Assembly (NCBI RefSeq): GCF_001194135.2
Contig: NC_068991.1
Location: 22,298,869-22,332,618, forward strand
Reading direction: 5' to 3'
From: Octopus bimaculoides
Lineage: Eukaryota
DNA length: 33,750 nt
In this document: one piece after another, positions 943-33,328 of the stretch
Position numbering within the stretch: the first letter of the stretch is position 1
Layout of the letters: every line of letters begins with the position of its first letter
Position numbers and translations under genes: made by a program
The notes under the pieces: model-generated
Told to the model about the DNA's origin: nothing
What the model saw: only the letters and a program-made list of their open reading frames with translations
Database searches by the model: none

Positions 943-3255
943 CTGAAAAAGATATAAATTTTTATATATATGATATGTCAATCTGACCAGATCACCTCCT
1001 CATACGCCCCTTCACCTCTCAAAGATTTCTTGTCTTGCAAAGTTACTTGGTGACCCTTCAAGTGCAGGTGCCACTTAAAAATGCACCCAGTCCACACTGT
1101 GAAGTGGTTGACATCTGGAAGGGCATCCAGCTGTAAAAAACATGCCAAAACTGACTTCGCCTGTACAAGTGTCACATAAAAAGCACTCAGCCCACTCTGC
1201 AGAGTGGTTGGTGTTAGGAAAGGCATCCAGATGTAAAAACCATACCAAAACAGACACAGAAGCATAGTGCAGGCTCCTGCCTGGCCAGCTCCTGTCAAAT
1301 TGTCCAACCCAAGCCAGCATGGAAGGAGGACGTTAAACAATGATCATGATAGTAATAATAATCCATGGATGTAATTTATAAATATTTTAATGCATTGCTA
1401 CACACGTTTCCACAAATCACATGTAACTTAAGATCATAGTCCATATTCCTGGGATGATTACAGTACAGTCCATAGTACTCATAGACATTAGGTGGATCAT
1501 ATTCATGCATTCATTTCTTTGGGCAATATGACATAATAAAATAGGAGCTTTCATATGCATATTCAAAATGTTACCTGTAAACAAACTTAAAGTATGTATG
1601 TCGGTATGTGTGTACATCAAAGCTTTACCAAAATTAAAAAATAAAGATATAGATCATCCTCACCTGTCCAACATCAATTTCATTTACATATTTGCGTGCC
1701 GTAGCACCATTAGTGGTGAATATAGCTGTTCCGTTGCCATAAGGGTTTTTGTTAATGAATTCTATGGCTTCATCAAGGGTGTCAACACTTAAAGAACATA
1801 AAACTGGACCAAAGATTTCCTCCCTGTAGCATTTCATATCAGGCTTTTAGCAATAAGAGAAATAAAGAGAGAGAAAGAAAATTAATAAAGACAATGATGA
1901 TGAGAAGGATAGATGTGTGTGCGTGCGTGCGTGCGTGTGTGTGTGTGTCGGTATATAGGGTAAATTGCTACCATTTTATATTCTTAATTTCACACATGCA
2001 CATTGTTTGTTTTTGTCAACTACACAGTATAGAAGGGTCAGTAAAGGACTGTCTGTGAGAAAAACAGCACCATGGCACAATTCACTCTGCTTGAAATTTG
2101 GAAACAATATGCTGTACTGCTTGGCATTCACACCGGAAGCTCCAATACAAAAAGATGGTGAACACACAGAACAACAGTTGGCTTGCCATGGAATCAAAAC
2201 ATGCTGAAAATGATAAAAAATCAAGCATCCAGTCAACATCATGCTGTCTGGAGTGATCACTAGTGATGGTAACGTTATGTCTCTATTCATCTTCCAACAA
2301 TGGCCTCAGACTCAATACAGAGGCCTTCATCAAGTGCTTGGAGGAGGTAATGCTGTCCTGGATCTAGAGAGTGGCTGCTGGAAGACCCTATGTCTAGCAC
2401 CACACCACACAAGCAGAACACAATCATGGCTGTCAAACAATTTCCCCCAAATCTGACCACCTAACTTCTCAGACTGCTACCCTCTTGATTATTATGTGTG
2501 GGGCACAGTTGAGCAAGAGATCAACAAAACACCTTGTAAAACCAATGATGAACTGAAGGCAAAGATTATGGCAGCATTCACCAATTTAAACAAGGAAACC
2601 ATCCAGACGAGTTTCAGAAGATTCCAAAGTCATCTGGAGGCTATGGTTGAAGCCAACGGCAATTTTATTATATAAATTTACTGTTTAGTATTTCAAGATA
2701 TTTTTATGTAATTTGGGTAAATATATCTGTTAAGCTGAAGTGAGATCGCAGCCACACATGTCTAGCCCAGTTAAGAGTCTCCCTGATGCATCGTGCAATA
2801 TATGCTTGAGAAGACCTGTTGAGTCAAGTAAAACCAATATCATAGCTATGGCCAGTGCCCCCTGACTGGCTCCCATGCCAGTGGCACATAAAAAGCACCA
2901 ACCAAACGTGGCCAGTACCCTCTGACTGGCCCGTGCTGGTGGCACGTAAAAAGCACTATCCGAACGTGAAAGATGCCAGACCCACCTGACTGACTTCTGT
3001 GCCGGTGGCATGTAAAAAGCACCCACTACACTCACGGAGTGGTTGGCGTTAGGAAGGGCATCCAGCGGTAGAAACATTGCCAGATCAGACAGGAGCCTGG
3101 CGCAGCTGCTGGCTCTCCAGACCTCAGTCAAACCATCCAACCCATGCCAGCATGGAAAACAGACATCAAACGATGATGATGATTATGAAAATGAAATGTC
3201 AATATTATTTTCATTTTTGCATAATTCAGATGACAATATATTCACTGCACCCTAT

Positions 3256-12200: not shown

Positions 12201-13315
12201 ATGTTTCAGGAAATGACGTTTTATCATTAGGAGAGAACGGTTTCTTAATTAGAACTCTTTAATCAATGCTACCCTTGAATTGTGGGTACTTGTTAAAATG
12301 TTTTTTTTTTATGTTAGGTGCACAACTAAAGGAGACTAAAGTTATGCCTGTATCTATGTGTGTGTATGTGTGAAATGTTTGTCTATCAATCTAAGGAAAA
12401 TCTTTCTCACACAAGTCTTGACATTGAGTGAGAAGGGTGGAATAAACCAAATGACATTTCTGTGGTGCTTCCTTTTCTGGGGGTTAGGGCCAGGCATGTA
12501 AGAGATGCGGTCCTTAAATCCACTCAAGGCCAGTGCCTCATTGTAGTAGGGCGCAGTAGCGTCAAAGATATCTTGGCTCGAGGAGAGATTTGAGATCCTC
12601 TTGCTAGACCTTTCACTAGGTTCTTGAAAACTATAGACAGGGTGACAGGAGGCTGTGCTAATATAAGACAGTCTCTTGTTTTGCTTGTGATAGGGCCTGT
12701 ATGTACCAGAGCTCAGATCTAAAGTAACATCTAAGAAATCTACTGTGGTAAGATTAGTCTCAATGGTGATCTTGAGACCATTGAGGGTGCTAATTAGGTC
12801 CTTTCTAAGTTTATCTAATGTGTGGCTGTTGGCTCCACTTGAGGTGGATAGGGTGTCATCTCTGTAGAGGCCAAAGAGATGTTCAGGGTGTACAGTCTGA
12901 TAAGATCACAGACATAAGTGTTGTCATATGCTCCCATAGCTACATCTAATGAGCCCTCGAATCTTTGCCGAACAGCACTGTCTTCCTGGCATGCATTATC
13001 ACTCTAACCTCACTATAATAACTGTGAAGCCCTTGGTAAAGGAAATAGCCTTCAACAATAACTCTTTATATATTTTTGTGTGTGTGTCTTTGGCTCTGTG
13101 TTTATGTCCCCACCACCGCTTGACAACCGACTTTAGTGTATTTAAGTCCTCATAACTTAGCAGTACGGCAAAAGAGATTGATAGCATAAGTACTAGGCTT
13201 ACAAAAATAAGTCCTAGGGTCAATTTCTTAGACTAAAAAAACAAAAACAAAACCTTTAAAGCGATGCTCCAGCATGGCTGCAGTCAAATGACTGAAACAA
13301 GTAAAAGAAAGAGTG

Positions 13316-13349
<34 letters not shown>

Positions 13350-16300: not shown

Positions 16301-19300
16301 AGGATCAATAGTTTGTTACCCATCTATTATGTTGTATGCCTTGAACTCCTTGAAGTATTTATAGTCTACTTAACTGTAAATTTTTATTAAAAGATTTAGT
16401 TCAGATCTTCAATCTAAGCAGTGAGGTCACTCTAGTTTCTGTCTCACAAAGCTTTGGCTGGTCCAAGGCATCACACAGTGAAAATGAACCTGAGACCATG
16501 TGGTAGGGATGCAAACTTCTTACCACTCGGCGGCCATACTTGTATCTATAGGCTAATTGTTGCTGGTACAGACCACCATCAGTTTCTTCAGACTTCTGAA
16601 CTTACACAACACACACTCATTGCTATAACATCACCTAACACATGTACCAAGACCATCACCTTACACAAAACATGCCCTAACTACCATACTACCAACTCAA
16701 AGTAAGATTTTAGTAGTAAATCAATGGCTCAGTACTACACTTGATGGTCAGTATACAAGTCACAGAAAATATGTAAAGAAAAGTGATGAAAATCACTGCA
16801 GTACAAGATATAGAGACAAATTTATTTTAATACTTCAGTCTTCTGCCCTTATCTTTTATTTTTAAATCAGCCAATGAGAAAGTGTCTATGTTGTTGCTCA
16901 ACCCACTAGAAAGAGCAGCTAAATCCTACGAACCACAAACAACCTTCTTAAAAACAGAAGGACACATTTCACACTCCCAAACACAGAATCTCTGAATAAG
17001 AATAGGATGGTCATGGTTGGAATACCTTTAATCATAATTCTTGCTTAATCAGGGCTGACCTGATACTTTTAGCATTTAGACTGGCCATAAGCATCCCAAA
17101 TAGTTGATGTTTTATATGGGGTGACAGCACTAAGCAGTGATGTGTATAAATACAACCTTGTTACTAGTTCAAATATGTTTGAGGCATGGATTTGAATATG
17201 CCTCAAGTATATTTGAACTGGTAAAAAGTTTGTATCTATGTTTTATGTTCAAGCCAGACAGATCTGACCTCTCACACCTATCCTTCAATGCCATTCTACA
17301 AATAAACAATCACATCATAGAAGTTTCAAAGCTACAAGATATATCATGATTAATTCAGAACAATATGAATAAATAACCAGAACATTTGACAGAAGAATCT
17401 GAATGCTAAAAGCTTAGAGTGACAAGAAAAACAACACCAAAAAAAATTAAGCATTGTCACATTGCTAAGCACCAGTTCTTTAGTTTTGTTTGAGGTTAAA
17501 GTTCAAGGAATGTGAACAAGACACTTTGAATGAGATGTGGTAAATGTCTCAACCATAGACAATTTCTGAAGTAAACTCTTTCTGTATTAAGACTTTCAGT
17601 ATGCAATCCAAAAAATAAACAGTAAAAAGATATCAATTGCAGTGAAAACCAAGTGAGTCACAGACAACCTTATTCTCTGACATGATTCAAGACAAGGAAA
17701 CAAAAGAGATAACTAGTGTTACAGACGCCTCCAACATGCAAGTATACAATGAAACTACTTACGTAGACCTCGAAGAACATCTCCTTCAGCATCGACCAGA
17801 GTTTTCCCTTGCTCTTCAGTGATATTTTTTGCCAGCTTTCCCTGAAAAATTACAAAAACAAACATTTAAAACAAAGTATCACAAAATCCTTTTATTTAAA
17901 GCCAGGTTAAATTTAGGTGCTTGTTCTCCAATAAACACTTGAATAAAATAAAACGTGAACACCAGCTGTAGGTATACCTCCACAAACACCAGTCATAATG
18001 AGGGAGCTTCTATGAAGGAAGAGTGATCAAACTCCTTTAAATCATAATATACTGTTTTATGTAACCTTGGCAGAATTTGAACTCAGAATGTAAAGACTGA
18101 CAAAATGAAGCTAAGCACTTTGTCTAGCATGCTAACAGTTCTACCAGCTCACCACTTTGGGCACATCTAGTAATATAACACGGGGTACATTAGGACTAAA
18201 ACAAAAAAAAAGAAAAGAAAATGGGATGGTATAACTCTAAGGTTTTTTTTGTTTTATTTTGTTTTGTTTTTAAGATTACTCTGTATCAGGATTCACCTGA
18301 GGCTAAATAACAACATACACAAACAGTCTACCATTCAAATCAACCGGCTATAAATAACAGCCAAAGCAACCTTATATCATACCATACTGATAAATATATT
18401 AAAAAGATACACCAACAATGTAGTTCTTGAAACTCAAAAAAGATGGGATGGACACAGCTGGAATGCCTTTAATCATAGATCTGGTGGGTAAGGGCTGACC
18501 TAGTGCTACAGAATACCACTGTCAACACAACCATTATCAAAACACACCAACAGAGTAACATACCATATTGTCTTTGATCAGTTGCTGGAGATTGAACATG
18601 CACTGCTGTCTAGTCAGGATGGTACTGTTGCGCCACGAACTGAAGGCTTTTTTGCAAGACTCTACAGCTGCATTCATCTCCTCCTGGGTAGATTCTGGCA
18701 CCCGTGTAATGACTTCATTTGTGGCCTGTGAAGTAGATAGAATATGTTCATTTGATTGATGGATAGATTTAGGTAAAGAGATAGACTTAAATATAGGTAG
18801 ATCTATTAGTACACTATGTATGCCCACATACGCACATATATACTTTACACAAGAAAAAGGTAAGCTCCGGCATTAATAGTCTTAGTATTAAATTTCAGTG
18901 GAAAGAAGTAAAAATATTTAAACGTTTCTTCACTAAAGAGATGAATGATTCAACCATATAATCACAGTAAAAATATAAATAAAATGTTAGAAGTTACTGT
19001 TACACATTATTACAAATGTTTGTTTATTCACAACACTGCTTTCTTGTGCCCACTACAATATTTTGTTTAGCTGGACTGGCATCATGCATGATCAGCACAT
19101 TTTGATGTTAATTTACTATTTTAAAAAAACGTTTCCGTAGTCATTTAAGAGTTGTCTTCCTTGTGGTACATGGGTACTGATGGTTGTCAAGGAGTGAGAA
19201 ATTTGCTCACCATTCCGCCAAGAGAGGACACCTTGAAATGATTTAATGTTTTTAAGCACCTGTTACCAAAAGGTAAGAAAGGTTCTAGCAAATTTAGCAG

Positions 19301-21499
19301 TGTAAATAGCCTTTGTAAAACATGTCCCAAACATATTTGAGTGGATCTAAATGTTTGTTTTTAAGAATATTTCTTTACGGCAATTATACAGAAACATAAA
19401 CATGATCCTCTGTAAGGCAACCATTGGTAACAATGACAGCAGTGTATCACTCCATATTTGAGATGGCGAGATTTGGTTTTTCTTCTTTTTTTTGTTAACA
19501 TTTAATGTTTACTTTTGAAAAGGACAATTCGAGAAATTTTCGTTTTTGTTCCACAAAACTGTTTCACATTACTATGTGAACAAACATGTCATGTGAACAC
19601 CCAAACTTAAGTCTGATTGTGTAATCTGTTGTGAACCATTCATATCAAGCTTACATTTTTATTGTAACCTTGTTTTTTTATTCAGACACAGTATATCTAA
19701 GACAACACTTCGTTAAAATAGCATGTGAGCTGAAGGAAATTTGGCTGCTATTTTTACCAGAGTGAGCACTTACACAGATACTCCCCCATTTGCTCATGTA
19801 TAAGCCAGGTATCTCATTTGTATTCTGTGTGTATCTATCTATATACAATATACATTTCTCTATTTTCATATCTGACTGTATTTGATTGCATGCGTGTGTG
19901 TGTGTGTGTGTGTGGGTGTGTGTGTGTGTTGTGCACATGTGTGTGTACGTGTTTCAGTATATTCATGTGTATGTAGTTGTGTAAATATAAATGTACTTAC
20001 AGGATTATGCAAGTCAATCCATTTGTTTGTCTTGGACTCCACAAATTCTCCATCGATGAACATTTTTGTGGTTGGCTGCAATAATTCAACAAAATCATAT
20101 TTCATTTCTCTGTTTCTCACATTGCAACACAATACTGAATGGATGAACATTAATGAACAGTACTAATTGGAAAAGTTGCATTTAGTAGTCCCATTACATT
20201 TAAGAAGTTGTGGTTCTTGAATAAATGAACAACTCAAACTGCTTCTTTTTAACCTGAATTTCTTTAAATATGGAAGAACTGTTTTTTTACTGGGCCAAAT
20301 AGGAAGAATTACTTCAGTTATTGAGCTGTTTAACCATTTTGATACCAACTCACCAGAGACTACCATTGGTACCATGATACACACTTCCTGTTTTAAAAAA
20401 ACCATCCATCAAAAATTCCAAGTTAATAACAAAACAGTTTATTAAATTCTTCATCATTTTAAAGATTAATTGGAACAAAGCAGTGTATTTCAATAGAAAT
20501 ATGATAATAAAACCATTAATATATCTTATTAAAAAGGCATTTCAATGAATTTGGTTAAAGGGTGGCACAATATTACATTGTAAGGTTAGTGAATACTTTT
20601 ATTACCATATTTCGGTTCAAATATATGGCCTTTGTTTCAATTCTTTATGTGTATAATGAAGAATTAAAAAGAATAACATTATTACACTGGGGATTGGAAT
20701 ATAGATTAACATAAAATTTTGATAGGTTTTAATTTAGATCACATTACAGCACAAGATTGATATTATTGCAATATGGGGTTTCTTTGGTGCAATGAGGTGT
20801 TAGTAAAGTAAATGAAGATGTATTTCATCTGCTATGTCAATAATAACTGAAGTACACTTGTGAACATTTAAATGAAATATTTACTGCTGGACTGTAACAT
20901 ATTTATTAATTATTAGCTATTTATAATGCATAACATAAAATGTTTGCTGACTGGGAAAGAGACAAACTGCCCCAAAATTACATATTGTGTACTTGATGAA
21001 ATTTCAAGAGAGTGTTGCACTTTGAGCTTGTTCCAAATGGTCATGCTGTAGTGCTTTGAAAGTGCACTACCCAGCATTGGTCAATTGAACACACACACTC
21101 CCCACAGTATGACAATGCTCTGGCACACACAGCCAATGTGACCAAACAGAAACCTAAGGAACTTGAGAGGCTGGAAGTGCTGCCTCACCCTGCCTACAGG
21201 TCAGACCTTGCATCATCAGATTACCACTTTTTCCAAGCCATGGCTCATTTCCTCTGAGAAAGAGGTTCAAAAATGTGGAGGAGGTTGAAAACTAGTACAA
21301 GGAGTCTTTTTGCCTCTAAATCAGCCAAATGGTATAGGTGTGAAATTGTGTGTCTGGCATGATGGCAACAGACAATAGAATATGATGGGATATATTTTGA
21401 TGAATAAACTCTTTACATATCTAATTTGTTTGAACTATCAATTAAAGCTTGAAATACGAAAAAGCTTTTGACTACATACATACATGCAGCATATATATA

Positions 21500-21541
<42 letters not shown>

Positions 21542-24500
21542 CAATCTTAGTGCTGGAATGACTCATTTGCTGTTTGCAAATAAAATTATTCATTTATTCT
21601 TTGAAAAGAGCATTACAGTAGCACATACACTCTCCACAGCATTACAATGCTCTGGCAGAGCAGGAACAATTGAGTGGTGAAGTTACACCAAAAAATAAAG
21701 ACACTACTACATATTGGAAGTACTTCATATTTTTTTTATTTGATCATCCAAANNNNNNNNNNNNNNNNNNNNNNNNNNNNNNNNNNNNNNNNNNNNNNNN
21801 NNNNNNNNNNNNNNNNNNNNNNNNNNNNNNNNNNNNNNNNNNNNNNNNNNNNNNNNNNNNNNNTATTATAAGTGTTAAATTAATTTTTCTGGTATATATT
21901 GCTGATTTAAAAAACAAAATGATAAAATGTTTTAAAAAAACTTACAGCTGCATAGCGACACGTCTGGGTGTGGAACTGAGACACTGATCCCAAGAAAGAC
22001 ACCTGAAAGCAAAATAAAAGATAAAAACTAATATAAATCAATAGCACAGAAAGTGTCAGCAGGGAAGTATCCAGGAGTCATGACCTGGATGTCGCCTGCC
22101 CCCGCCCCTCCCCACCCTTACAGTGTAAGGGAGTTAAGGGCCAAAACAGTTGAAACACTTGCATGAAGAGGACTTCTTCTCTGAAGACCTTCTGCTCTTC
22201 AGTTCTCCCAAGAGTCGTTTTACTATCTCAACAGCAAGTTAACAAGTGGTATGCTGCATTTCAGATCCAATTATAAATGATGTACAATTGAACAGCCAAC
22301 AAAATTGGCGGTCAAGTGACATAACAAAATTTTTTAAAAAATTAAAAAAACTAATGAAAATAAAACGTGCATGCATACACACACACACACATCATCAGAA
22401 ATGTGTTAGTGAAAGAGTGAAAAGTTAAGAGAAACTGAAAATACCTCCTTCCCTACTTCCTCTATCAATCTATCCCATGGAAGCTTCTTCGTGGTAACTA
22501 ACCTATTACACATAAGCCAAGTTTACTTCAAATCCCATTTTACCATCTTAAAAAGATATGTATCAAAGTCAATGTAGTCCTAGGTACGCTATGCCTTAAA
22601 CAATTACAGGATGATCAGGTAATAGAAAGAGCAGCCAAATCTCCCTCAAATCTCATCTGATGATATTGAAAAAAAAACAAAGCATACCCAAGCCAATATT
22701 GTAGATACATTATGCCTTAAACAATGACAGGATAGGTAGGCACTAAACATAGCAGCCAAATTTCCCTTAAATCCAACTTAACCATCTGAAGAATTTGATG
22801 CATCCAGTATAATCCTAGATATACTATGCCTTAATGATATATCAGGTTTTGAATGCCTTTGTTCAGAATTATGCTCAAGAAGGCTGACATGGGACTAAAC
22901 AACTGGCCTATCTGTCCCTTTAAAATTCACATCAGCCAATAAACAGTGAAACTGTAGCTTCAACAAAGTATCCCAAACATTGAACATGGAACTTGTCTGT
23001 GATAAACTATGGCATAGAAATATATACAAGATAATTAGAAGTATAGAATAATACTTGGTAGGGAAACCAAATATGGAGAAGATAGATTGCTTAGAATAAA
23101 CACAAAAGCAGAAGAATTAATGATTATGACCTTTAACAACTTGGATAATGTAGTAAAGATTGCCAACATAACATGGCAGTCCTGGTTTAGGACTAATGTT
23201 GCTGTAATTTAGCCCCAGGAGACATCGTCTCCAGCTGGCTATGCGACACGATCTGTGTCCTTATATTTTCGAACAAGGGAATCTAGCGCCCCCACTCAGC
23301 TCAATACAATATCTATGTATCGCGATTTCTGGGTTATTTCCCTTCATCAGCACAGAATAATTGCTTGGCTAAAGGTGGCACTGCCAAATTCCTGTTCGAA
23401 ATATAGTTTTCAAGGTGACAACTAGTCAATGATTTATAAATTAGAAAATTACTGAGGCTAAATTACAGCAACATTGGTCCTAAACCAGGACTGCCATGTT
23501 ATGTTGGCAAACAATCTTTACTACAAAGTATTATTGCTGAATATCTCGCATTGTGAGCCACCTCTAGTTGAGCAATTATTCTGTGCTGATGAAGGGAAAT
23601 AACCCAGAAATCACGATACACAGATATTGTTTTGAGCTGAGTGGGGGTGCTAGATTCTCTTGTTCGAAAATATAAGGACACATATCGTGTCGTATAGCCA
23701 GCTGGAGACGATGTCTCCTGGGGCTAAATTACAGCAATATTAGTCCTAAACCAGGACTGCCATGTTATGTTGGCAAACAATCTTTACTACAAAGTACTGT
23801 TGCTGAATATCTCACGTTGTGAGATTTGAAAATAGTAATTTTCTAACTTGGATAATGCTGTGAACAGAGAAAGAGAGAGGTAGGAGTTGTGCGCATGTAG
23901 ATGAGATGTGTGTGCATGTTTAATAGTGTGTGTGTGTGTGTGTGTGTCAGCTATTGAGAGTAAACTTCTTAATGTCCCAATAGCTGAACCACAGAGTTGT
24001 AAGGAAATTTACTCTCACCAACTACTAGCATCATTTTAATGTCAACTTTTCCTTGCTTAGATGGGTCAGACAGAATTTGCTAAGGCATCTACAACCAGAT
24101 GCCCTTCCTATCACCAAGATTATATCATATATATCTAAGTCACAATATATGGATTCATGTAATTCAGTAGTATTCATAAAAACATTCTAGTGGAGCTGAA
24201 CATCTTATCTGACCACCAGTCCCCAGATCTCAATGTTATTGAGCATTTATGGTGCACTTTAGAAAAACATGTAAGGAGTCGATACCTTCCACCATCATCA
24301 CTACAAGAACTGGAGACTGTTTTAGCTGAAGAATGGACAAAAATTTCTTTGGAAACAATTCAAACTTTGTACGAGTCCAAACCTTGTAGAACTCAAGCTG
24401 TAATTACTGCCAAAGGCAGTCCTACCCCATTTTAAAATAATTTGTTTGAAATTTTAAGGTGTTTCCATTATTTTGTCCAACCCCTGAATATGTACACACT

Positions 24501-29200: not shown

Positions 29201-32200
29201 TAACAATAGAAAAGACAGGGAAAAAGAGATGGCCAAAGACTGGAATGTCTGTGAGTGAGTTACAGTAATCCCTCACCACACAACAATACTGTTTCTACTT
29301 TGTGGATTTTCACCTATCGCAGGAGGTTTTGGAACATAACACCCATGATAGTCGAGGGATTCCTGTAATGCCAATCAGTCAAGTGGTCTTTCTTTGAAGG
29401 CAGACTAGGATGCCTGAGTGCTTAGCAATATCCCAGATGTGGGAGCAATATTCCTTTTTGAGCCTCACTCAAGCTTTGTAGAGAGTAGACAATTTTGGAG
29501 GGCTGAAATATTTTATGGCCTGGAAGAGAAGGGCCAGTCTTAGGTATGTTAAGAATATGTTATTTGGTGCAACTGTGAAGGCTCTAGTAGAGTACCACTT
29601 CTGTTTGGGGCAGGCCAATGCAACAGTATTTTCTTGATATAAGTAGTGCTTGAACATTTTTTGACACTAAAAGCAACAAGATTGGCATGGTCGTACTAGG
29701 ACATTCGCAAAATCACTGTTCATGGAATCAGTGCAGGTTTGGCATGTGGTGTCTAAGTTGTGTGTTGATGATGTATAGTTGGAGATGGTTAGGAAGAAAT
29801 GAAGAATTGTAACACCCGTATAAGAGAGTTGTTGGATGTGACAGCAAGTAGGTCATTGATGTATAGGTCAAAGAGAGTGGAGGGCAAAACCTAACCCATG
29901 GGTATTACCAGAGTTGACTGAATGTGGGACAGAAAGAGCTCTATCAACATATTCTGCAGCTGTGTGATCTGGTTGGAAGCTACATATCTAAAAGATGAGT
30001 GGAGCCTATAGTCAGAAAGCTTTGATAGGAAATCCACAACATGGATGAAGGCTTTGCAGGTGTCTAAGCTAAAAACACTGCTGTTGCCAAACTTCTCCAA
30101 CACAAGATCCCACTGGTGACATAAGAAAATAGTTCTTCAGTGGGTCTGACTCAAAACGGGAATGTGGTAAATAACAATATGCATATACATGCACTGTATA
30201 TGCACAAGCATGCTTATTTTCCAACTTGCACCTCTATAACTGAGCAGCTCTCTGTCCATCTGCCTATCTGTTTTTCTATCAGCATGTCTACTACCTCCAT
30301 TCAAAACCACCTGGGGCTCAATCCATTTCTAAAAGTAGTAAGATTAGTGAGCTACTAATGGTGATAATTCCTGTCCTATTGTACACAAGGAGAAAACTTG
30401 AATTCAAGAAATTTCAAGCTATATTACAGATCCAGATCCCAAGATAGCTTATTTCTGTCTTACATCACTTGCCACCTGATTTTCTAGTTTTCATAAATGT
30501 AAAATTTTGCCCCATGTTAATTATTTGAAGGCAGTCAGGTGAAAGTATTTACTGTGCCCATTCTAGTTGTGGTTTTCTTTTTGTCTTTTCACAGGTAACT
30601 TCAGAAAGAGAAGGAAATTCATTTTTCCTGATTATTTTGTTTTGATGCAGAATTTGCACAAACATGAAGGTTAAAGGATCATTATTGAAGAAGCACTGAA
30701 ATTCTGGAAGTATAATTAGTTTGATCTAAAATATACATCTTATATAAGGTAGACCATATGCATTTACTAGTATAATTCACAGTAACTGATTAACGATTTT
30801 CTTTTTTAAGAAATCATTTGGATATCAGATACTGATATGGTACATTGGATTGTAACTTCAATATCAGTAATTCAAAAGTGGTACCCATGTAATAGTAGCC
30901 TAATGTCTCTGAGAAAAAAAATGGATGTCAGATAATCAGCTTTCACATTTGTTATAAATTTCAAGACACGGAGTTCGACAGATTGATGAGGTACTGGATC
31001 ATCAATGAAATGGTCAATAGTTTTCATTTTGTCGCCAGTGATTGGAAAAAGAAAAGATAGTTCTCACATAGCCCACTCTTCCAATTTTAAATATATAATA
31101 CTGGTGGATGACATAGTTCACTATAATAAAAAAAGTAACTGTTTAATTTACATGTTTCACTAACTTACATAGATGATCTCAAAACATCGTATGAATGTTT
31201 CTTGTAAAATAAGGGCACTGATAATTTAACTACTTCTAGATACATGGCAGGAAGATAAAGTACTCAAGTGATGCTTTCTGATTGAGTGGACTTATAAATC
31301 TAAGGCATTGTGCTTACATAAACAAGAAAAATATTGAAAATAACTGAAGGGCAAAGAAGGTTAATGTTATTAACCTTTTATTGCTTTTACATAAAATTTA
31401 TTACTCGTAAAATAAGTTCGTATGTTGTGAGAAGTGAGTGCCAACGTTTTGAGCAAGATTGCCTGTGGTATTTAAACACGAAAAATCCTAGACATGTTTT
31501 AAAAAGAAAAAGGAAAAGGTTTGGAAAAACAAATTCAAGTGAACAAAAAAACTTCCCAGTTATACAGAACCCTGCAATATATAATTTACCGCAAAAAAAA
31601 AAAAAAATGGTATGGGGATGATTTTAAGCAACCAATAAAAAAGGGCAACTAAATTCAATAACTACCTGACTTTTTCTCTTTTATAAATACAGTAAAGTCA
31701 GTTTATGCAAAAGAACTGTCGTTTAATGTAGGGTAAAGCGGTAAAAATAATATTTTATGTAATTGTCAACACGAATTGTTCTCGTGAAATGTATATATTG
31801 TGTGAACAGTACCTTGAGCATTTAATTAAATGAAATAAGTTATCTAAACAAAACGCTGTGAGTAAACATTTTCTGTAACATTGTAAATGGTTTCATTCCA
31901 CATCTAGTTCAAAAACACTACGCCTACATGTAAATACATCATGAAAAATAGGCAGGTTGTTGAGCAAGATTTCACACATAATTCAGAGACTAAGCGAAAA
32001 ATGATCGAAGGCCGTAACAAGATACAGTGGGTTACATTCAACTCCATTATATAATTTGTTATGTAAGATGCAGACACATGTACAAACTTGCACACACACA
32101 CAAGGTAACATCTACGCAGGTATACATGTAACAACTACATGTAAGGGCAAGATAGAAACCACTACATAGTCGCTTCATCGCTAAAAATAGCAGCCAAATA

Positions 32201-32709
32201 TCCCGCAAATCTACCGTCTTAAAAATTAAGACGAGACGGACCTATTGAGTAAAAGTAGTTTTGAAAATAAAGAAAAGAAAGGAATGTTATGGCTAAATAA
32301 TTTTTATCATAGGTCTGGAATACAAAATCTAACCTAGGGCTAAACAAAATAAGGTATACATAAGTACACGTAAAAATACACGTATACACACAAAAAGGGC
32401 AAACTACACGTATACATACAAAAAGGGCAAAATACACGTATACATACTAAAAAAATATATAATAACTACGCATGCACACGCACATGTAACAATTAACAAA
32501 TGTGCATAAAGAACTGTGTATATATGCACCATATAACAGCATGTGCATGTATACACAGAAAGATTATTTCTCAATGCATGAACAAATAATAACAAAAACT
32601 TGCTCCTGCTGCATATATGTACTATGGTGAAAAGAGCAAGTGAAGATACATCATCAATAGCCACAAAACTTACTCGATGCCGCAGAGTGAGACGTAGAAG
32701 CGAGGCCAT
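844..32709 (-). CDS. ALDH6A1: Methylmalonate-semialdehyde dehydrogenase [acylating], mitochondrial; spliced gene, 14 coding exons in window, last exon outside
   Basis: Exons join in frame (36+57+75+162+79+155+148+65+57+60+130+182+180+99 = 1485 nt). ALDH motifs PFNFP, KPSE, SFVGS, catalytic GQRCMAL, EEIFGPV. SNMGAKNH replaces the general-base LELGGK motif, which is diagnostic of CoA-acylating MMSDH. No stop codon seen in window. Confidence 0.97.
978..1355 (+). mobile_element. SINE-like repeat with two tandem GGCATCC core modules
   Basis: gaagggcatccagctgtaaaa near 1118 and gaaaggcatccagatgtaaaa near 1218; the 3' end resembles the other copies. Confidence 0.7.
1664..1843 (-). CDS. ALDH6A1: ALDH6A1 exon 13, [14 protein letters not shown]...EIDVGQ
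   Basis: 180 nt; EEIFGPV motif; AAG acceptor (ttgctaaaag), GTGAGG donor. Confidence 0.96.
1956..3254 (+). mobile_element. Degenerate maT-like Tc1/mariner transposon, interrupted by an RTE-tail repeat
   Basis: Transposase remnants [47 protein letters not shown]. Ends TA|tagggt and accc-ta|TA; the left TIR has a ~9-nt deletion relative to the right. Confidence 0.8.
2734..3186 (+). mobile_element. RTE 3'-tail-derived repeat (three ~60-nt units, GGAAGGGCATCC core, (GAT)n tail)
   Basis: Co-linear with 6600-7050. Units start at 2851, 2911, 2975. Ends in gatgatgatgat. Confidence 0.85.
3295..3433. other. Assembly gap (N) inside a (TA)n tract
   Basis: N run. Confidence 0.99.
3689..3870 (-). CDS. 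ALDH6A1: ALDH6A1 exon 12, (G)[13 protein letters not shown]...[13 protein letters not shown]
   Basis: 182 nt, phase 1 to 0; tttag acceptor, GTGTGA donor. Not in the ORF track. Confidence 0.96.
4037..7050 (+). mobile_element. 5'-truncated, degenerate RTE-clade LINE (APE endonuclease end, RT, 3' UTR)
   Basis: VGDFNGHVG...SQVDYIL (endonuclease); [37 protein letters not shown] (RT); LHGSEIW C-terminal motif. Many stops and frameshifts. The ORF ends near 6600 and runs into a ~450-bp 3' region. Confidence 0.92.
7304..7433 (-). CDS. ALDH6A1: ALDH6A1 exon 11, [16 protein letters not shown]...KLKVNA (catalytic Cys codon 7395-7397)
   Basis: 130 nt, ends phase 1; tgtag acceptor, GTAAAT donor. Confidence 0.97.
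7740..7930 (+). mobile_element. Older copy of the same SINE family
   Basis: ctttatgttgagagttcaa...aaagtacc...attgctgaccttgt...attattatt. Confidence 0.55.
7931..8151 (+). mobile_element. tRNA-derived SINE with (ATT)n tail
   Basis: A-box-like tggcagaatcc, B-box-like gagttcaaat, body ctttcatcctttc..aagtaccagttgagcactgggg; shared with the 33120 and 33447 copies. Confidence 0.8.
8154..8213 (-). CDS. ALDH6A1: ALDH6A1 exon 10, [20 protein letters not shown]
   Basis: 60 nt; ttcag acceptor, GTAATA donor. Confidence 0.95.
9433..9685 (+). mobile_element. Truncated copy of the RTE-tail/GGCATCC repeat
   Basis: One hairpin unit, core and degenerate (GAT)n tail; co-linear with 2940-3186. Confidence 0.8.
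9931..9987 (-). CDS. ALDH6A1: ALDH6A1 exon 9, [19 protein letters not shown]
   Basis: 57 nt; aacag acceptor, GTGAGT donor. Confidence 0.95.
10356..10420 (-). CDS. ALDH6A1: ALDH6A1 exon 8, (S)[21 protein letters not shown]
   Basis: 65 nt, phase 1 to 0; ttcag acceptor, GTAAGT donor. Confidence 0.96.
10915..12265 (+). mobile_element. Tc1-family transposon fossil; transposase pseudogene 11105-12142
   Basis: One 346-codon frame (ATA for ATG, four internal stops): [35 protein letters not shown] (second Asp lost), [17 protein letters not shown]. Outer boundaries are approximate; TIRs not confidently seen. Confidence 0.9.
12370..13070 (-). mobile_element. Degenerate Penelope-like element reverse transcriptase fragment
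   Basis: Frameshifted pieces read [94 protein letters not shown]. This is the PLE RT motif series with the GLYRDD signature. Confidence 0.85.
13085..13310 (+). mobile_element. 3' part of another SINE-like repeat family
   Basis: cataagtactaggcttacaaaaataagtcc...gctccagcatggctgcagtcaaatgactgaaacaagtaaaaga; recognised from recall only. Confidence 0.55.
13640..13815 (+). mobile_element. Short copy of the GGCATCC repeat
   Basis: ttggcattaggaaaggcatccagctgtagaaac ... gcatggaaaatggacattaaatgtagatgatgatg. Confidence 0.7.
14042..14189 (-). CDS. ALDH6A1: ALDH6A1 exon 7, [22 protein letters not shown]...VIHGQHD
   Basis: 148 nt, phase 0 to 1; KPSE motif; gttag acceptor, GTAAGT donor. Confidence 0.96.
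14470..14697 (-). mobile_element. 228-bp non-autonomous mariner deletion derivative
   Basis: TA|ttagattgtccagaaagtccgtgccgattt and aaatcggcacaaactttccagacaacccaa|TA TIRs. Minus strand reads [24 protein letters not shown]. Confidence 0.85.
14722..14900. mobile_element. Second copy of the CCCTTTAGCA MITE
   Basis: ccctttagcattcaaa ... tttaaatgctaaagga; interior similar to 177-406. Confidence 0.75.
15090..15244 (-). CDS. ALDH6A1: ALDH6A1 exon 6, (Q)VVETCC...[14 protein letters not shown]
   Basis: 155 nt, phase 1 to 0; tttag acceptor, GTAAGT donor; PFNFP motif. Confidence 0.96.
15379..16261 (+). mobile_element. Mariner transposon with internal deletion
   Basis: ~30-bp TIRs (tgaggggaggtcaaaaagtaatgccatttt / aaaatggcattactttttgactcaccctca), TA duplication. 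Remnants [34 protein letters not shown]; most of the catalytic domain is deleted. Confidence 0.92.
16440..16545 (-). mobile_element. SINE 5' head fragment; a similar fragment lies at about 28395-28470
   Basis: ccaaggcatcacacagtgaaaatgaacctgagaccatgtggt resembles ccaaagtgccatgcagtaagactgaatctaagaccacacggt; minus strand reads as a tRNA-like head. Confidence 0.55.
17066..17413. mobile_element. Third, oppositely oriented copy of the same MITE, with an internal insertion
   Basis: cttttagcatttagactggcc ... ctgaatgctaaaagctta; interior is the reverse complement of the other two copies. Confidence 0.65.
17763..17841 (-). CDS. ALDH6A1: ALDH6A1 exon 5, [26 protein letters not shown]
   Basis: 79 nt, ends phase 1; ttcag acceptor, GTAAGT donor. 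Not in the ORF track. Confidence 0.96.
18564..18725 (-). CDS. ALDH6A1: ALDH6A1 exon 4, [10 protein letters not shown]...QQLIKDNM
   Basis: 162 nt, cacag acceptor, GTATGT donor. Confidence 0.96.
20001..20075 (-). CDS. ALDH6A1: ALDH6A1 exon 3, [25 protein letters not shown]
   Basis: 75 nt, tgcag acceptor, GTAAGT donor; matches MMSDH N-terminus. Confidence 0.96.
21090..21480 (+). mobile_element. Mariner transposase C-terminal fragment
   Basis: [11 protein letters not shown]...[18 protein letters not shown] (35 residues between the two Asp); ends not resolved. Confidence 0.8.
21753..21863. other. Assembly gap (N)
   Basis: N run. Confidence 0.99.
21946..22002 (-). CDS. ALDH6A1: ALDH6A1 exon 2, [19 protein letters not shown]
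   Basis: Acceptor ttttgctttcag, donor GCT|GTAAGT, 57 nt, phase 0/0, presequence-like composition. Confidence 0.82.
22560..22905. repeat. Degenerate ~115-120-bp tandem repeat of a dispersed family (related pieces at ~16880-17062 and ~18295-18510)
   Basis: tatgccttaa at 22590, 22711, 22825; agcagccaaat at 22630, 22752; shared gaatgccttt...ggctgac end motif. Confidence 0.6.
23312..23356 (-). ncRNA. Minimal type I hammerhead ribozyme motif (copy 2, sense to ALDH6A1 pre-mRNA)
   Basis: Reverse complement reads TCTGTG-CTGATGA-AGGGAAATAACCCA-GAAA-TCGCGAT-A-CATAGA, with a perfect AUCGCGAU palindrome in stem III; predicted cut between 23318 and 23317. Confidence 0.78.
23580..23624 (+). ncRNA. Minimal type I hammerhead ribozyme motif (copy 1)
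   Basis: TCTGTG-CTGATGA-AGGGAAATAACCCA-GAAA-TCACGAT-A-CACAGA: 6-bp stem I, CUGAUGA and GAAA cores, short stem II, near-palindromic stem III, AUA triplet; predicted cut after 23618. Confidence 0.75.
24180..24486 (+). mobile_element. Tc1 3' fragment with right TIR
   Basis: [12 protein letters not shown]...[13 protein letters not shown] followed by ggtgtttccattattttgtccaacccctg. Confidence 0.85.
24491..24670. repeat. 22-24-bp CA/TA-derived minisatellite running into an assembly gap
   Basis: cacatacatacaaacatatatgca repeated. Confidence 0.9.
24671..25340. other. Assembly gap (N)
   Basis: N run. Confidence 0.99.
25624..25780. repeat. 49-bp minisatellite, ~3 copies
   Basis: cgtaca at 25635, 25684, 25733. 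Confidence 0.9.
26764..27706 (+). mobile_element. Degenerate mariner transposon
   Basis: 31-bp TIRs (26/31), TA duplication. Remnants [24 protein letters not shown] and [18 protein letters not shown]. Confidence 0.9.
28227..28274. repeat. 20-bp tandem duplication, 2.4 copies
   Basis: ggggagactgattctaaagt x2 plus ggggagac. Confidence 0.9.
28860..30120 (-). mobile_element. Degenerate CR1/L2-type LINE, 3' part of RT ORF plus 3' UTR
   Basis: [62 protein letters not shown] resemble the C-terminal half of a CR1/L2 ORF2. Clade assignment is from motif recall. Confidence 0.75.
29263..29365. mobile_element. Tigger/pogo-like MITE nested in the CR1/L2 LINE
   Basis: TA + CAGTAATCCCTC ... GAGGGATTCCTG + TA (TIR 11/12, TA duplication). 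Removing it rejoins the LINE sequence. Confidence 0.8.
32365..32445. repeat. 28-bp tandem repeat containing four TACACGTA motifs
   Basis: tacacgta at 32365, 32377, 32405, 32433. Confidence 0.85.
32674..32709 (-). CDS. ALDH6A1: ALDH6A1 exon 1 coding part, [12 protein letters not shown] (mitochondrial presequence-like)
   Basis: ATG in aacATGG context, Arg/Leu/Ser-rich with no acidic residues, donor CGA|GTAAGT, phase 0 fits exon 2. Assigned by composition and splice signals, not by strong homology. Confidence 0.8.
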
Positions 32710-33110
32710 GTTCAAGGAGTTAAACATTGCTCTCAAGACACAGCTGTATATAATTGACACTATTCTGTATCAGTTCGGCAATTTCAACCTCGAATCAGGG
32801 TATGACCTCTTCACCCCTCATATAGCTAATGGTTTATTCGCCTCCTTTACGTATTTATTGTGTTGCTATTTGGAAAATAAAATTGTTTTCGTTTTTTTTT
32901 TTCCTAAAGTTATTTTCCTTTATTTTTATTAATACTATTTGATTTTTTTCAACTTCTCTCTCTTTCTAACTCTCCCTCTTTCCCTCCAGCTCTCTCGCTT
33001 CTCCCTCTCTCTTTCTTTTCTTCCTACTCTCTCTCCACACCACTCGGCAACGAGACATATGTACCCCACCACCCGAAAGATACATCTGAACTAGTTTTAG
33101 AGATGTATTT
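32710..33110 (-). promoter_or_regulatory. Probable 5' UTR and promoter region of ALDH6A1
   Basis: Immediately upstream of the ATG, CpG-retaining, with a long CT/GA tract at ~32950-33040. The TSS cannot be located from sequence alone. Confidence 0.5.
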
Positions 33111-33119
33111 TTCACCAAA

Positions 33120-33328
33120 TGTTTAACACTCCGGGGGAAATGCTTAGTGGCATTTCGTCAGTCTTCACAATCTGCGTTCAAATTCTGCCGAGGTTGACTT
33201 TGCCTTTCATCCTTTCGGAGTCGATAAAATAAGTACCAGTTGAACACTGAGTTCAATGTAACCGATTTATCCCCTCCCACGAAACTTCTGGCTTTGTGCT
33301 AAAATTTGAAATCATTATTATTATTATG
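33120..33328 (+). mobile_element. tRNA-derived SINE, CpG-retaining copy upstream of the gene
   Basis: gcgttcaaattctgccgaggttgactttgcctttcatcctttcggagtcgataaaataagtaccagtt ... (ATT)n. Confidence 0.85.

What the first reader, a model, noticed from the sequence alone, without database searches (positions are those of the whole stretch)
23150..23823. Candidate cephalopod non-LTR retrozyme: 266-bp repeat unit carrying a minimal hammerhead ribozyme
Seen: a 266-bp unit is present as ~1.4 tandem copies on + (23456-23823) and ~0.9 copy on - (23150-23379). Each orientation has stem I (TCTGTG/CACAGA), CUGAUGA, a 3-bp stem II with AAAUAA loop, GAAA, a palindromic stem III (AUCGCGAU) and an AUA triplet. 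Established: small tandem repeats with minimal type I hammerheads and palindromic stem III define metazoan non-LTR retrozymes, which cleave as dimers, yield small circular RNAs and are thought to be mobilised by Penelope-like elements. Inference: this is a young, dispersed, non-coding retroelement family (copies ~94-95% identical, CpGs still intact) that may yield a ~266-nt circRNA. I do not know whether it has been described in this lineage. Caveat: the stem II closing position is A-A rather than G-C, so activity is uncertain.
Basis: partly seen in the sequence, partly recalled or inferred. Interest (0 to 1): 0.9.

Follow-up and report, generated by a model that had tools for sequence, protein, structure and literature searches.

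The report
Octopus hammerhead-ribozyme retroelement insertion
This is one roughly 700-bp insertion of a short non-coding mobile element carrying a minimal hammerhead ribozyme motif, laid down in an octopus-type genome in the tandem-plus-inverted pattern typical of Penelope-like retrotransposons; it is a real member of a known class, and this copy cannot make a circular RNA.

Summary
A 266-bp unit is present as 1.40 tandem copies on + (23452-23823) and 0.87 copy on - (23149-23379), 93-95% identical. Each full copy carries a minimal type I hammerhead motif. A descriptor for this motif gave 0 hits in 1500 simulated windows.

New here: the block 23151-23844 is one insertion flanked by a perfect 13-bp target-site duplication. 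Its layout is an inverted head-to-head copy, a 72-nt spacer, a partial tandem and a 21-nt tail. This is the published signature of Penelope-like element (PLE) integration.

The host is an octopod-like cephalopod. PLEs are reported as recently active in Octopus vulgaris.

- The stem III palindrome is intact only in the minus copy. The plus copy has a CpG-to-CpA change.
- CpGs are partly decayed.
- Each strand carries only one hammerhead, so this locus cannot release a 266-nt monomer.
- "Dispersed family" is untested. No other copy lies in the window or in 123 kb of Octopus DNA.
- Rfam models do not detect the motif.

The odd A/A pair flanking stem II recurs in an unrelated O. vulgaris motif, so it is probably a lineage variant rather than damage.

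Verdict: a new member of a known kind (PLE-type minimal hammerhead, non-LTR retrozyme-like element). Moderate interest.

The parts
23138..23150 (.). Left target-site duplication, AACTTGGATAATG
   Evidence: 13/13 identical to 23845-23857 and placed exactly at the outer edges of the repeat block. The last 2 nt (TG) overlap the end of the inverted copy as microhomology.
23149..23379 (-). Inverted copy A, unit positions 1-235. Its 5' end faces inward and its 3' side abuts the left duplication. It has a 4-nt deletion relative to the plus copies.
   Evidence: BLASTN 93.2% over 235 nt; alignment.
23312..23356 (-). Minimal type I hammerhead motif, intact version. Stem I is UCUGUG/CAUAGA, followed by CUGAUGA, A, GGG-AAAUAA-CCC, A, GAAA, the palindrome AUCGCGAU, and H17 = A at 23318.
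   Evidence: Descriptor hit. The RNAcofold homodimer MFE is the double-hammerhead topology, -25.7 kcal/mol against -8.4 per monomer.
23380..23451 (.). 72-nt spacer between the head-to-head copies. It is weakly collinear with unit ~88-161 in + orientation. Its last 11 nt belong to a 16-nt segment (23438-23453) that is an inverted copy of the tail/duplication junction.
   Evidence: The collinear similarity is not significant on its own (81 of 1000 shuffles). 23438-23453 matches the reverse complement of 23834-23849 at 15/16.
23452..23556 (+). 5'-truncated upstream copy B, unit positions 162-266. It has no hammerhead.
23557..23823 (+). Full-length copy C, unit 1-266 plus 1 nt, joined head-to-tail to B.
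23580..23624 (+). Hammerhead motif of copy C. The core is intact. Stem III is AUCACGAU, with one CpG-to-CpA change that breaks the palindrome. H17 = A at 23618, so predicted cleavage is at 23618|23619.
   Evidence: In the homodimer MFE, stem III no longer forms.
23824..23844 (.). 21-nt non-unit tail, ATTTGAAAATAGTAATTTTCT, near-palindromic, lying between the 3' end of the array and the right duplication.
   Evidence: PLE insertions are described as often carrying a 30-40-bp tail at one end (PMC8557442).
23845..23857 (.). Right target-site duplication, AACTTGGATAATG

Best explanation
Window 23151-23844 is a single retrotransposition insertion of a short (266-nt unit), non-coding, non-autonomous element. 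The element carries a minimal, dimer-dependent type I hammerhead motif, and it was integrated by the machinery of a Penelope-like element (PLE).

Shown:
- the unit and its copies;
- the 13-bp target-site duplication;
- the layout of head-to-head inverted copy, spacer, partial tandem and tail;
- a hammerhead core with three helices that is far beyond chance;
- a predicted double-hammerhead fold.

Inferred mechanism for the family:
1. Source loci with two or more units in tandem are transcribed.
2. The 8-nt palindromes (15.1-16.1) of two motifs pair in trans to build stem III, and stem I also forms in trans.
3. [quoted passage not shown]
4. A PLE reverse transcriptase/GIY-YIG nickase copies more than one unit at a staggered nick. 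Priming from both nicked strands yields the inverted copy.

This particular locus is a dead end. It has only one hammerhead per strand, and the plus one has lost the palindrome through CpG decay. It cannot release a monomer.

If read through as part of a host transcript, its main effect would be a ~220-bp, 95% paired RNA hairpin.
For: - Repeat anatomy.
- Target-site duplication: 13/13 at the exact outer borders.
- The published PLE hallmark is a partial tandem, an inverted copy adjacent at the 5' side, a tail at one end and a variable duplication length (PMC8557442). Non-autonomous PLE derivatives giving head-to-tail multicopy insertions are also described there.
- Hammerhead statistics: 0 descriptor hits in 1500 simulated windows. 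A relaxed descriptor gave 6 hits against 0.07 expected in 155 kb of window plus Octopus DNA.
- The cofold MFE equals the double hammerhead. A 2.3-unit transcript with the palindrome restored adopts or nearly adopts this fold, with ddG 7.9 kcal/mol out of -199.
- The monomer RNA folds unusually well: z = -3.3, with 0 of 200 shuffles as stable.
- Stem I changes from G-C to G-U between the two copies and keeps pairing.
- The same CUGAUGA-A-GGG...CCC-A-GAAA plus 8-nt palindrome architecture, with different stems I and III, occurs at O. vulgaris L007:20252-20299.
- There is no ORF longer than 74 codons in any frame of the unit and no tRNA-like head.
- Host and partner: only Octopus proteins match the neighbouring LINE. 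Shared repeats are 73-89% identical to Octopus loci. Thirty-one PLE families with 336 recent insertions are reported in O. vulgaris (PMC13282606).
- Minimal hammerheads in PLE pseudo-LTRs, and retrozymes as PLE derivatives: PMC4209133 and bioRxiv 10.64898/2026.07.22.740005.
Against: - No Rfam hammerhead hit, even at E<=10.
- Position 10.1/11.1 is A-A, where PLE minimal hammerheads keep a highly conserved G-C. Catalysis is therefore unproven, and such motifs cleave poorly in vitro even when canonical.
- No second locus of the family was found in the window or in 123 kb of Octopus DNA, by a protein-word search of its longest frame, or by pattern scans. A multi-copy family is therefore assumed, not shown.
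- No PLE ORF lies in the window, and no similarity to a PLE pseudo-LTR could be tested.
- The tail is 21 nt, not 30-40.
- The inverted copy is complete at its 5' end and truncated at its 3' end, whereas the PLE description speaks of 5'-truncated inverted copies.
- The hammerhead region is no better conserved than the rest between the two copies: 2 differences in 45 nt against 12 in 190. This is expected for neutral decay after one insertion, but it gives no evidence of selection.
Confidence: 0.72

Rival explanations
1. The unit is not a separate non-autonomous family. It is the pseudo-LTR (terminal repeat) of an autonomous PLE, and this locus is a heavily truncated or rearranged PLE insertion.
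For: Minimal hammerheads map to PLE pseudo-LTRs, and most genomic copies are truncated PLE remnants. Xenopus retrozyme families are sister to PLE pseudo-LTRs. PLE insertions are heavily 5'-truncated.
Against: The head-to-tail junction at 23556|23557 joins unit end directly to unit start with a 266-nt period. The copied template therefore repeated every 266 nt with no ORF in between. A truncated autonomous PLE would give a single 3' fragment, not more than one unit. No RT or GIY-YIG remnant is adjacent.
Confidence: 0.13
2. It is an ordinary short interspersed or satellite-like repeat whose hammerhead-like stretch is non-functional. The A-A at the base of stem II would abolish catalysis, so the motif is a relic or coincidence and plays no part in the element's life cycle.
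For: A-A replaces the conserved G10.1-C11.1. No Rfam match. PLE-type minimal hammerheads show low in vitro activity and an unknown role, and PLE clades without hammerheads proliferate well. The ends of the copies do not coincide with the predicted cleavage site.
Against: Chance is excluded for the motif as a whole. The A...A arrangement recurs with different stems I and III in a second octopus motif. Helix lengths are the canonical 6 bp for helix I and 4 for helix II if A-A counts as a pair. The double-hammerhead fold is the predicted MFE.
Confidence: 0.1
3. It is not a mobile-element insertion at all. It is a local inverted-plus-tandem duplication produced by replication or repair error, or a foldback/MITE-type DNA transposon.
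For: The 220-bp, 95% inverted repeat resembles foldback elements. Only one locus is known.
Against: The block is flanked by a perfect 13-bp direct duplication at its exact borders. The two termini are not inverted repeats of each other: the left end is unit position 235, and the right end is unit 266 plus a 21-nt tail. CpG o/e is twice the background, which argues that the block is younger foreign sequence.
Confidence: 0.05

Closest known systems
Minimal type I hammerheads of Penelope-like elements (Cervera & de la Pena 2014, PMC4209133; Lunse, Weinberg & Breaker 2017, cited in PMC7761336)
   Same: The CUGAUGA / GAAA core is shared. There is no closed helix III; instead a palindromic 15.x-16.x segment can pair only between two copies. 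An extra nucleotide follows A9. Loop 1 is poorly defined and stem I is open. The motif sits in a repeat laid down in tandem and in opposite-strand pairs a few hundred bp apart.
   Different: There is a second extra A between stem II and G12, so the conserved G10.1-C11.1 closing pair is replaced or preceded by A-A. Stem II is only 3 G-C pairs, against 6-8 bp in the Schistosoma and Drosophila examples. The repeat unit is 266 nt with no ORF.
Metazoan non-LTR retrozymes (Cervera & de la Pena 2020, PMC7229834; Li, Clavereau & Pollet 2026 preprint, 10.64898/2026.07.22.740005)
   Same: The unit size of 266 bp falls in the 170-400 bp range. GC is below 45%. There is no ORF, LTR, PBS or PPT. The repeat is arranged head-to-tail. 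The target-site duplication is longer than 4 bp. The predicted monomer fold is stable and branched. PLE is the likely helper.
   Different: Retrozymes are defined around canonical type I hammerheads with loop 1-loop 2 contacts and arrays of two or more ribozymes. Here the motif is the minimal PLE type. There are only 1.4 units with one ribozyme per strand, no expression or circRNA data, and an inverted copy.
PLE insertion architecture (Evgen'ev & Arkhipova 2005; Arkhipova 2006; Craig et al. 2021, PMC8557442)
   Same: It shows a partial tandem, an inverted copy abutting the 5' side, an extra tail at one end and a variable-length target-site duplication. Non-autonomous derivatives that form head-to-tail multicopy insertions are known.
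   Different: There is no RT/GIY-YIG ORF. The tail is 21 nt rather than 30-40. A 72-nt spacer separates the head-to-head copies. The inverted copy is truncated at its 3' side rather than its 5' side.
Newt/salamander satellite 2 hammerhead (Epstein & Gall 1987; Forster 1988, as summarised in PMC7229834)
   Same: It is a ~300-bp repeat whose hammerhead has too weak a helix III to act alone and cleaves as a double hammerhead between neighbouring units.
   Different: The amphibian motif keeps a 1-2-bp helix III with a tetraloop and conserved loop-loop contacts. It occurs in long arrays with tens of thousands of copies.

Membership tests
Hammerhead ribozyme, type I minimal (PLE-type) | Conserved core C3 U4 G5 A6 N7 G8 A9 ... 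G12 A13 A14 | tested here: met
   CTGATGA and GAAA are present in both copies in the right order and spacing.
Hammerhead ribozyme, type I minimal (PLE-type) | A15.1-U16.1 pair followed by H17 (not G) at the cleavage site | tested here: met
   GAA-A...U-A, triplet AUA; H17 at 23618 (+) and 23318 (-).
Hammerhead ribozyme, type I minimal (PLE-type) | Helix I formed by the sequences immediately 5' of C3 and 3' of H17 | tested here: met
   6 bp, UCUGUG/CACAGA. The minus copy has CAUAGA, a G-C to G-U change that keeps the pair.
Hammerhead ribozyme, type I minimal (PLE-type) | Helix II hairpin closed by the highly conserved G10.1-C11.1 pair | tested here: not met
   GGG/CCC with loop AAAUAA is flanked by an A on each side, so the position next to A9 and G12 is A-A. 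The same arrangement occurs in O. vulgaris L007:20252-20299. The feature is defined in PMC4209133.
Hammerhead ribozyme, type I minimal (PLE-type) | Palindromic 15.x-16.x segment allowing an intermolecular helix III (double hammerhead) | tested here: met
   AUCGCGAU is a perfect 8-nt palindrome in the minus copy, and the cofold MFE is the double hammerhead. It is broken in the plus copy, which reads AUCACGAU.
Hammerhead ribozyme, type I minimal (PLE-type) | Match to a curated covariance model (Rfam Hammerhead_1 and relatives) | tested here: not met
   No hit at gathering score or at E<=10. Four other descriptor-positive octopus motifs, including one with a closed helix III, are also missed, so the models are insensitive to this class.
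Hammerhead ribozyme, type I minimal (PLE-type) | Site-specific self-cleavage | not testable with these tools
   Needs in vitro transcription of monomer and dimer constructs.
Metazoan non-LTR retrozyme | Short (about 150-450 bp) head-to-tail repeat, GC below 50%, no ORF, LTR, PBS or PPT | tested here: met
   266-bp period, GC 0.40-0.45, longest stop-free frame 74 codons.
Metazoan non-LTR retrozyme | Canonical type I hammerhead with closed helix III and loop 1-loop 2 tertiary contacts | tested here: not met
   There is no loop 3 and no closed loop 1. Only an internal loop lies 6 bp up an extended helix I in the predicted fold.
Metazoan non-LTR retrozyme | Two or more ribozymes in the same orientation, so that a unit-length RNA can be excised | tested here: not met
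   There is one motif on + (23580-23624) and one on - (23356-23312). Copy B lacks the hammerhead region.
Metazoan non-LTR retrozyme | Many genomic copies; linear and circular unit-length RNAs in tissues | not testable with these tools
   No host genome or transcriptome is available. No copy was found in 157 kb sampled.
Penelope-like element insertion (non-autonomous derivative) | Partial tandem plus inverted copy adjacent to the 5' side | tested here: met
   The array B+C spans 23452-23823 on +, and the head-to-head copy A spans 23149-23379 on -. The hallmark is described.
Penelope-like element insertion (non-autonomous derivative) | Target-site duplication of variable length and a short tail at one end | tested here: met
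   A 13-bp duplication and a 21-nt tail at the right end only. The tail is shorter than the 30-40 bp quoted.
Penelope-like element insertion (non-autonomous derivative) | Sequence similarity to the 3' end or pseudo-LTR of an autonomous PLE of the same genome | not testable with these tools
   No octopus PLE sequences are available here. PLE presence and recent activity in Octopus is known only from the literature.
tRNA-derived SINE mobilised by a LINE | tRNA-like Pol III head and LINE-type 3' tail (poly(A) or simple repeat) | tested here: not met
   ARAGORN finds no tRNA-like structure. The 3' end is ...GTTGTGAG plus a non-A tail.
MITE / foldback DNA transposon | Terminal inverted repeats at both ends of the element | tested here: not met
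   The left terminus is unit position 235. The right terminus is unit 266 plus a 21-nt tail. The termini are not complementary.

The most novel reading that the evidence does not exclude
Octopods carry a lineage-specific hammerhead variant in which an A-A pair replaces the near-universal G10.1-C11.1 at the base of helix II, and it is catalytically competent as a dimer. Under this reading the 266-nt element is one of several active, PLE-mobilised families that produce small circular or linear RNAs. The footprints at this locus are two priming events, fixed ends at unit 266|1, and a snap-back copy of the tail/target junction. They would then record how PLE enzymes build tandem/inverted insertions from a short multimeric RNA.
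Probability: 0.2. Interest if true: 0.55.

Novelty: new member of a known kind. Interest (0 to 1): 0.35.

Why it matters
Minimal hammerheads are known by the thousands in animal genomes, but their role in Penelope-like retrotransposition is still called a mystery.

This locus is a compact, fully readable example. It holds a 266-nt ORF-less unit with such a ribozyme, laid down with every structural mark of PLE integration inside 700 bp. It therefore supports, from insertion anatomy rather than phylogeny, the recent proposal that animal retrozyme-like repeats are non-autonomous PLE derivatives.

It extends that class to cephalopods. The literature searched here holds no description of it in that group.

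It also points to a recurring A-A variant at a normally invariant helix II position, which is cheap to test biochemically.

For genome annotation, Rfam models miss this class entirely, and such elements are probably filed as unknown or unclassified SINE-like repeats in octopus repeat libraries.

Tried and rejected
1. Rfam at gathering score on the whole window, and at E<=10 on 22900-24100, gave no ribozyme of any class. The same was true for five Octopus loci. I conclude that the curated models are insensitive to loop-less helix III motifs, not that the motif is absent.

2. I searched for other family copies by translating the longest stop-free frame (74 aa) and searching 5.8 billion proteins. 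No candidate was found.

3. A pattern scan for CTGATGAAGGGNNNNNNCCCAGAAAT returned two metagenome hits. Both are GC-rich or coding sequences without stems I and III, so they are chance matches. There were no viral hits.

4. A full-text search for the hammerhead sequence in papers gave nothing.

5. Species identification through the aldehyde dehydrogenase exons returned only 64-69% hits (a slug, a fish and unnamed sequences), which is uninformative. The LINE endonuclease fragment worked instead.

6. BLASTN of the insertion against 123 kb of O. bimaculoides, O. sinensis and O. vulgaris DNA gave no copy.

7. I asked whether copies A and B derive from one template unit and C from another. The three-way alignment shows only singleton differences, so this is not informative.

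8. I asked whether the spacer is a diverged unit segment (88-161). It is collinear, but the score is reached by 81 of 1000 shuffles, so the question is left open.

9. I looked for a second ribozyme that would explain ends at unit 266|1. There is no Rfam hit, and the sequence at the junction (GUGAG|CC) violates the hammerhead NUH rule.

10. I considered a foldback/MITE, a tRNA-SINE and a local duplication, and rejected all three (see membership tests).

11. One script timed out on a slow shuffle. It was replaced by strand folding.
Full report
**1. What is in the sequence**

The region holds three copies of one 266-nt unit.
- The repeat finder reports a direct repeat with 266-nt spacing, 23452-23557 vs 23718-23823, 93% identical.
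- It also reports an inverted repeat of 220 nt, 23160-23379 vs 23557-23776, 95% complementary.
- BLASTN of the monomer 23557-23822 against the window places copy C at 23557-23822 (unit 1-266).
- It places copy B at 23452-23556 (unit 162-266, 93.3%).
- It places copy A on the minus strand at 23379-23149 (unit 1-235, 93.2%).
- It finds nothing else in 33.7 kb.

Tandem Repeats Finder does not list the array, as expected for fewer than two copies.

**2. The hammerhead motif**

On the plus strand at 23580-23624 the sequence reads UCUGUG-CUGAUGA-A-GGG-AAAUAA-CCC-A-GAAA-UCACGAU-A-CACAGA.

On the minus strand (23356-23312) it is the same, except that the helix III segment is A-UCGCGA-U and the 3' strand of helix I is CAUAGA.

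- The core boxes, the A15.1/U16.1 pair, H17 = A and a 6-bp helix I are all present.
- The C/U difference in helix I turns a G-C pair into G-U and keeps the helix.
- The 8-nt palindrome AUCGCGAU is intact only in the minus copy.
- The plus copy carries CG to CA, one of several CGCG to CACG or CGCA changes between copies.
- The ancestral unit therefore most likely had the perfect palindrome, and the plus copy has decayed.

Statistics:
- A descriptor requiring CUGAUGA, a helix II of at least 3 bp with at most one unpaired base on either side, GAAA, an A...U palindrome, H17 and a helix I of at least 5 bp found the minus copy.
- It found nothing in 1500 first-order Markov windows of the same size, both strands.

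Folding:
- RNAcofold of two 45-nt motifs from the minus copy gives exactly the double hammerhead as its minimum-energy structure: helices I and III in trans, helix II in cis.
- The energy is -25.7 kcal/mol against -8.4 per monomer.
- With the plus-copy sequence, helix III is lost.
- In a 2.3-unit transcript with the palindrome restored, one motif already adopts this conformation in the unconstrained fold.
- Forcing the adjacent pair costs 7.9 of 199 kcal/mol.
- The 266-nt RNA running from cleavage site to cleavage site folds at -80.5 kcal/mol, z = -3.3, with 0 of 200 shuffles as stable. The complement gives z = -2.4.

**3. What does not fit a textbook hammerhead**

- No Rfam model matches at gathering score or at E<=10.
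- Helix II is flanked by an A on each side.
- PLE minimal hammerheads characteristically have one extra nucleotide after A9 but keep a highly conserved G10.1-C11.1 (PMC4209133).
- Here there is also an A between C and G12. Either A-A occupies 10.1/11.1, or both As bulge.
- Counting A-A as a pair gives helix II 4 "pairs" and helix I 6 bp before an internal loop, which is the canonical metazoan geometry.

The arrangement is not a private defect of this locus.
- In 25 kb of O. vulgaris DNA fetched for another purpose, L007:20252-20299 reads GUCU-CUGAUGA-A-GGGAUAU-CCCUA-AUAUCCC-A-GAAA-CAGCUGU-A-AGGC.
- It has the same A-GGG...CCC-A frame and a perfect but different 8-nt palindrome (ACAGCUGU).
- Helix I is different and helix II is longer.
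- No sequence similarity extends outside the motif.

Whether A-A permits catalysis cannot be decided in silico.

**4. The block is one insertion with PLE-type anatomy**

- AACTTGGATAATG occurs at 23138-23150 and again at 23845-23857, exactly at the outer borders.
- Between them lie copy A (inverted, 5' end inward), a 72-nt spacer (23380-23451), B and C head-to-tail, and a 21-nt non-unit tail (23824-23844).
- They also describe an extension tail at one end and a target-site duplication of variable length.
- They note non-autonomous derivatives that form head-to-tail multicopy insertions (PMC8557442).
- The B|C junction joins unit end to unit start directly. The template therefore repeated every 266 nt with no ORF, which argues for a short non-autonomous element rather than a truncated full-length PLE.
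- The unit has no frame longer than 74 codons and no tRNA-like part.
- The two termini are not inverted repeats of each other, which excludes a foldback or MITE element.

**5. Fine structure, partly unexplained**

- The 3' end of the plus array and the 5' end of the inverted copy both fall at unit 266|1 (GTTGTGAG|CCACC). This is 62 nt upstream of the predicted cleavage site.
- With four ends, such a coincidence has a probability of roughly 0.07 under random placement. It is a hint, no more, that the template had fixed linear ends rather than being a circle opened at the ribozyme site.
- The inverted copy joins the left duplication through 2 nt of microhomology, as in priming from the second nick.
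- 23438-23453 is a 15/16 reverse complement of the last 11 nt of the tail plus the first 5 nt of the right duplication.
- The tail itself is nearly palindromic. This looks like snap-back synthesis during resolution.
- The spacer is weakly collinear with unit 88-161, but not significantly so.

**6. Host and helper**

The window is eukaryotic: 36% GC, CpG o/e 0.27, with assembly gaps.

- A LINE endonuclease fragment at 4039-4413 matches only Octopus sinensis, O. bimaculoides and O. vulgaris named proteins, at 60-72% identity (Pfam Exo_endo_phos_2).
- The window shares a ~2.9-kb LINE and ~250-330-bp SINE-like repeats with loci from those three genomes at 73-89% nucleotide identity.

"Cephalopod" is thus supported. 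The species is not determined.

- Penelope-like elements are reported as abundant in coleoids (PMC8967140).
- In O. vulgaris, 31 families with 336 recent insertions are reported (PMC13282606). That paper mentions neither hammerheads nor retrozymes.
- The giant squid genome paper lists 235 Rfam Hammerhead_1 hits without comment.
- Two full-text searches (retrozyme/hammerhead/cephalopod; hammerhead ribozyme/octopus) turned up no description of such elements in cephalopods.

**7. Hammerhead-like motifs are frequent in octopus DNA**

A relaxed descriptor also accepts closed helix III hairpins. It found 6 hits in 155 kb against 0.07 expected. Two are in the window and four are in O. vulgaris locus L007.

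One of the four, at 17105-17157, has G10.1-C11.1 and a 4-bp helix III with a 6-nt loop. It sits inside a 342-bp unit present as 1.16 copies, 16942-17339. That is a retrozyme-like locus of the more canonical kind.

Rfam misses all of them.

**8. State of this locus**

- Each strand has one motif and copy B lacks it, so no transcript of this locus contains two cleavage sites. No 266-nt monomer or circle can arise here.
- The plus motif has also lost its palindrome.
- Copies differ by 5-7%. CpG o/e is 0.54, twice the local background but well below 1.
- The copies were probably identical at insertion. Using the rate implied in PMC13282606 (JC 0.09 at about 25 My), the insertion is roughly 10 My old. 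This is an inference.
- Between the two motif-bearing copies, the hammerhead region is not better conserved than the rest: 2 differences in 45 nt against 12 in 190. That is what neutral decay of a dead copy predicts.

**9. Genomic context**

- Aldehyde dehydrogenase exons, most similar to methylmalonate-semialdehyde dehydrogenase, lie on the minus strand near 8.1, 18.6 and 20.0 kb.
- A CpG-rich stretch at 31.1-33.2 kb contains ATGGCCTCGCTTCTACGTCTCACTCTGCGGCATCGA followed by gtaagt. This may be the first exon.
- If so, the insertion lies in a long 5' intron, and its arms would form a ~220-bp hairpin in the pre-mRNA. This is an inference.

**10. Verdict**

The best reading is a single, now inert, PLE-type insertion of a short non-autonomous element with a minimal dimer-type hammerhead.

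It works like a non-LTR retrozyme or PLE pseudo-LTR repeat. Strict membership in the retrozyme family as defined (canonical hammerhead, two or more ribozymes, circRNA) is not met at this locus or could not be tested. The G10.1-C11.1 criterion of PLE hammerheads is not met.

It is a new member of a known kind, in a lineage where the searched literature holds no description of such elements, with a recurring A-A variant worth a bench test.

Family copy number, helper identity and catalysis remain open because no host genome or transcriptome was available.

Noticed in passing
L007 (O. vulgaris OX597830.1) 16942-17339: A 342-bp unit is present as 1.16 copies (56-nt terminal direct repeats, 94.6% identical). 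It encloses a well-formed type I hammerhead at 17105-17157 with G10.1-C11.1, a 4-bp helix III with a 6-nt loop, and a 6-bp helix I. It is a retrozyme-like locus of the more canonical kind, and Rfam misses it.
   Followed up: partly
L007 6184-6262 (+), 7601-7651 (-), 20252-20299 (+): Three further hammerhead-like motifs lie in the same 25-kb O. vulgaris locus, and none in the other four Octopus loci (98 kb). The motif at 20252 shares the A...A flanks of helix II with the window element and lies about 200 nt downstream of a decayed LINE RT ORF. The reason for the clustering in one locus is unknown.
   Followed up: partly
window 23438-23453 and 23834-23849: A 16-nt inverted duplicate (15/16) covers the tail/target-site junction and sits right at the 5' edge of the plus array. 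The 21-nt tail is itself near-palindromic (GAAAAT AGTA ATTTTC). It may be a snap-back footprint of insertion resolution.
   Followed up: partly
window 8100-8230, 18537-18720, 20003-20074 (minus strand): These are exons of an aldehyde dehydrogenase gene, most like methylmalonate-semialdehyde dehydrogenase (Pfam Aldedh). The best database identities are only 64-69% (a slug, a fish). No Octopus orthologue was returned.
   Followed up: partly
window 31150-33250: This is the only CpG-rich stretch of the window (o/e 0.66-0.93 against a median of 0.20). It contains a possible first coding exon on the minus strand ([12 protein letters not shown] followed by gtaagt at 32709-32674). It is a candidate promoter/CpG island of the dehydrogenase gene.
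   Followed up: partly
window 4038-7049 (+): A decayed LINE (endonuclease-RT) is about 80% identical over 2.7-2.9 kb to copies in O. sinensis (L004) and O. vulgaris (L005). The related annotated proteins are named "craniofacial development protein 2-like".
   Followed up: partly
window 2740-3194, 6670-7049, 9434-9684, 13067-13342: A SINE-like repeat of about 250-450 bp is present four times in the window and many times in all five Octopus loci, at 73-89% identity.
   Followed up: no
window 10949-11620 (+): This is a fragment of a Tc1/mariner-type transposase (HTH_Tnp_Tc3_2, just below the Pfam cut-off).
   Followed up: no
window 22570-22834: Diverged direct repeats (72 nt at 79%, spacing 121; 30 nt at 80%, spacing 235) lie just upstream of the insertion. 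They are an unrelated short tandem-like repeat.
   Followed up: no
window 23160-23379 with 23557-23776: If transcribed through, for example as intron sequence, the two arms would form a ~220-bp, 95% paired RNA hairpin. This is the kind of substrate expected to attract A-to-I editing or small-RNA processing in cephalopods.
   Followed up: no
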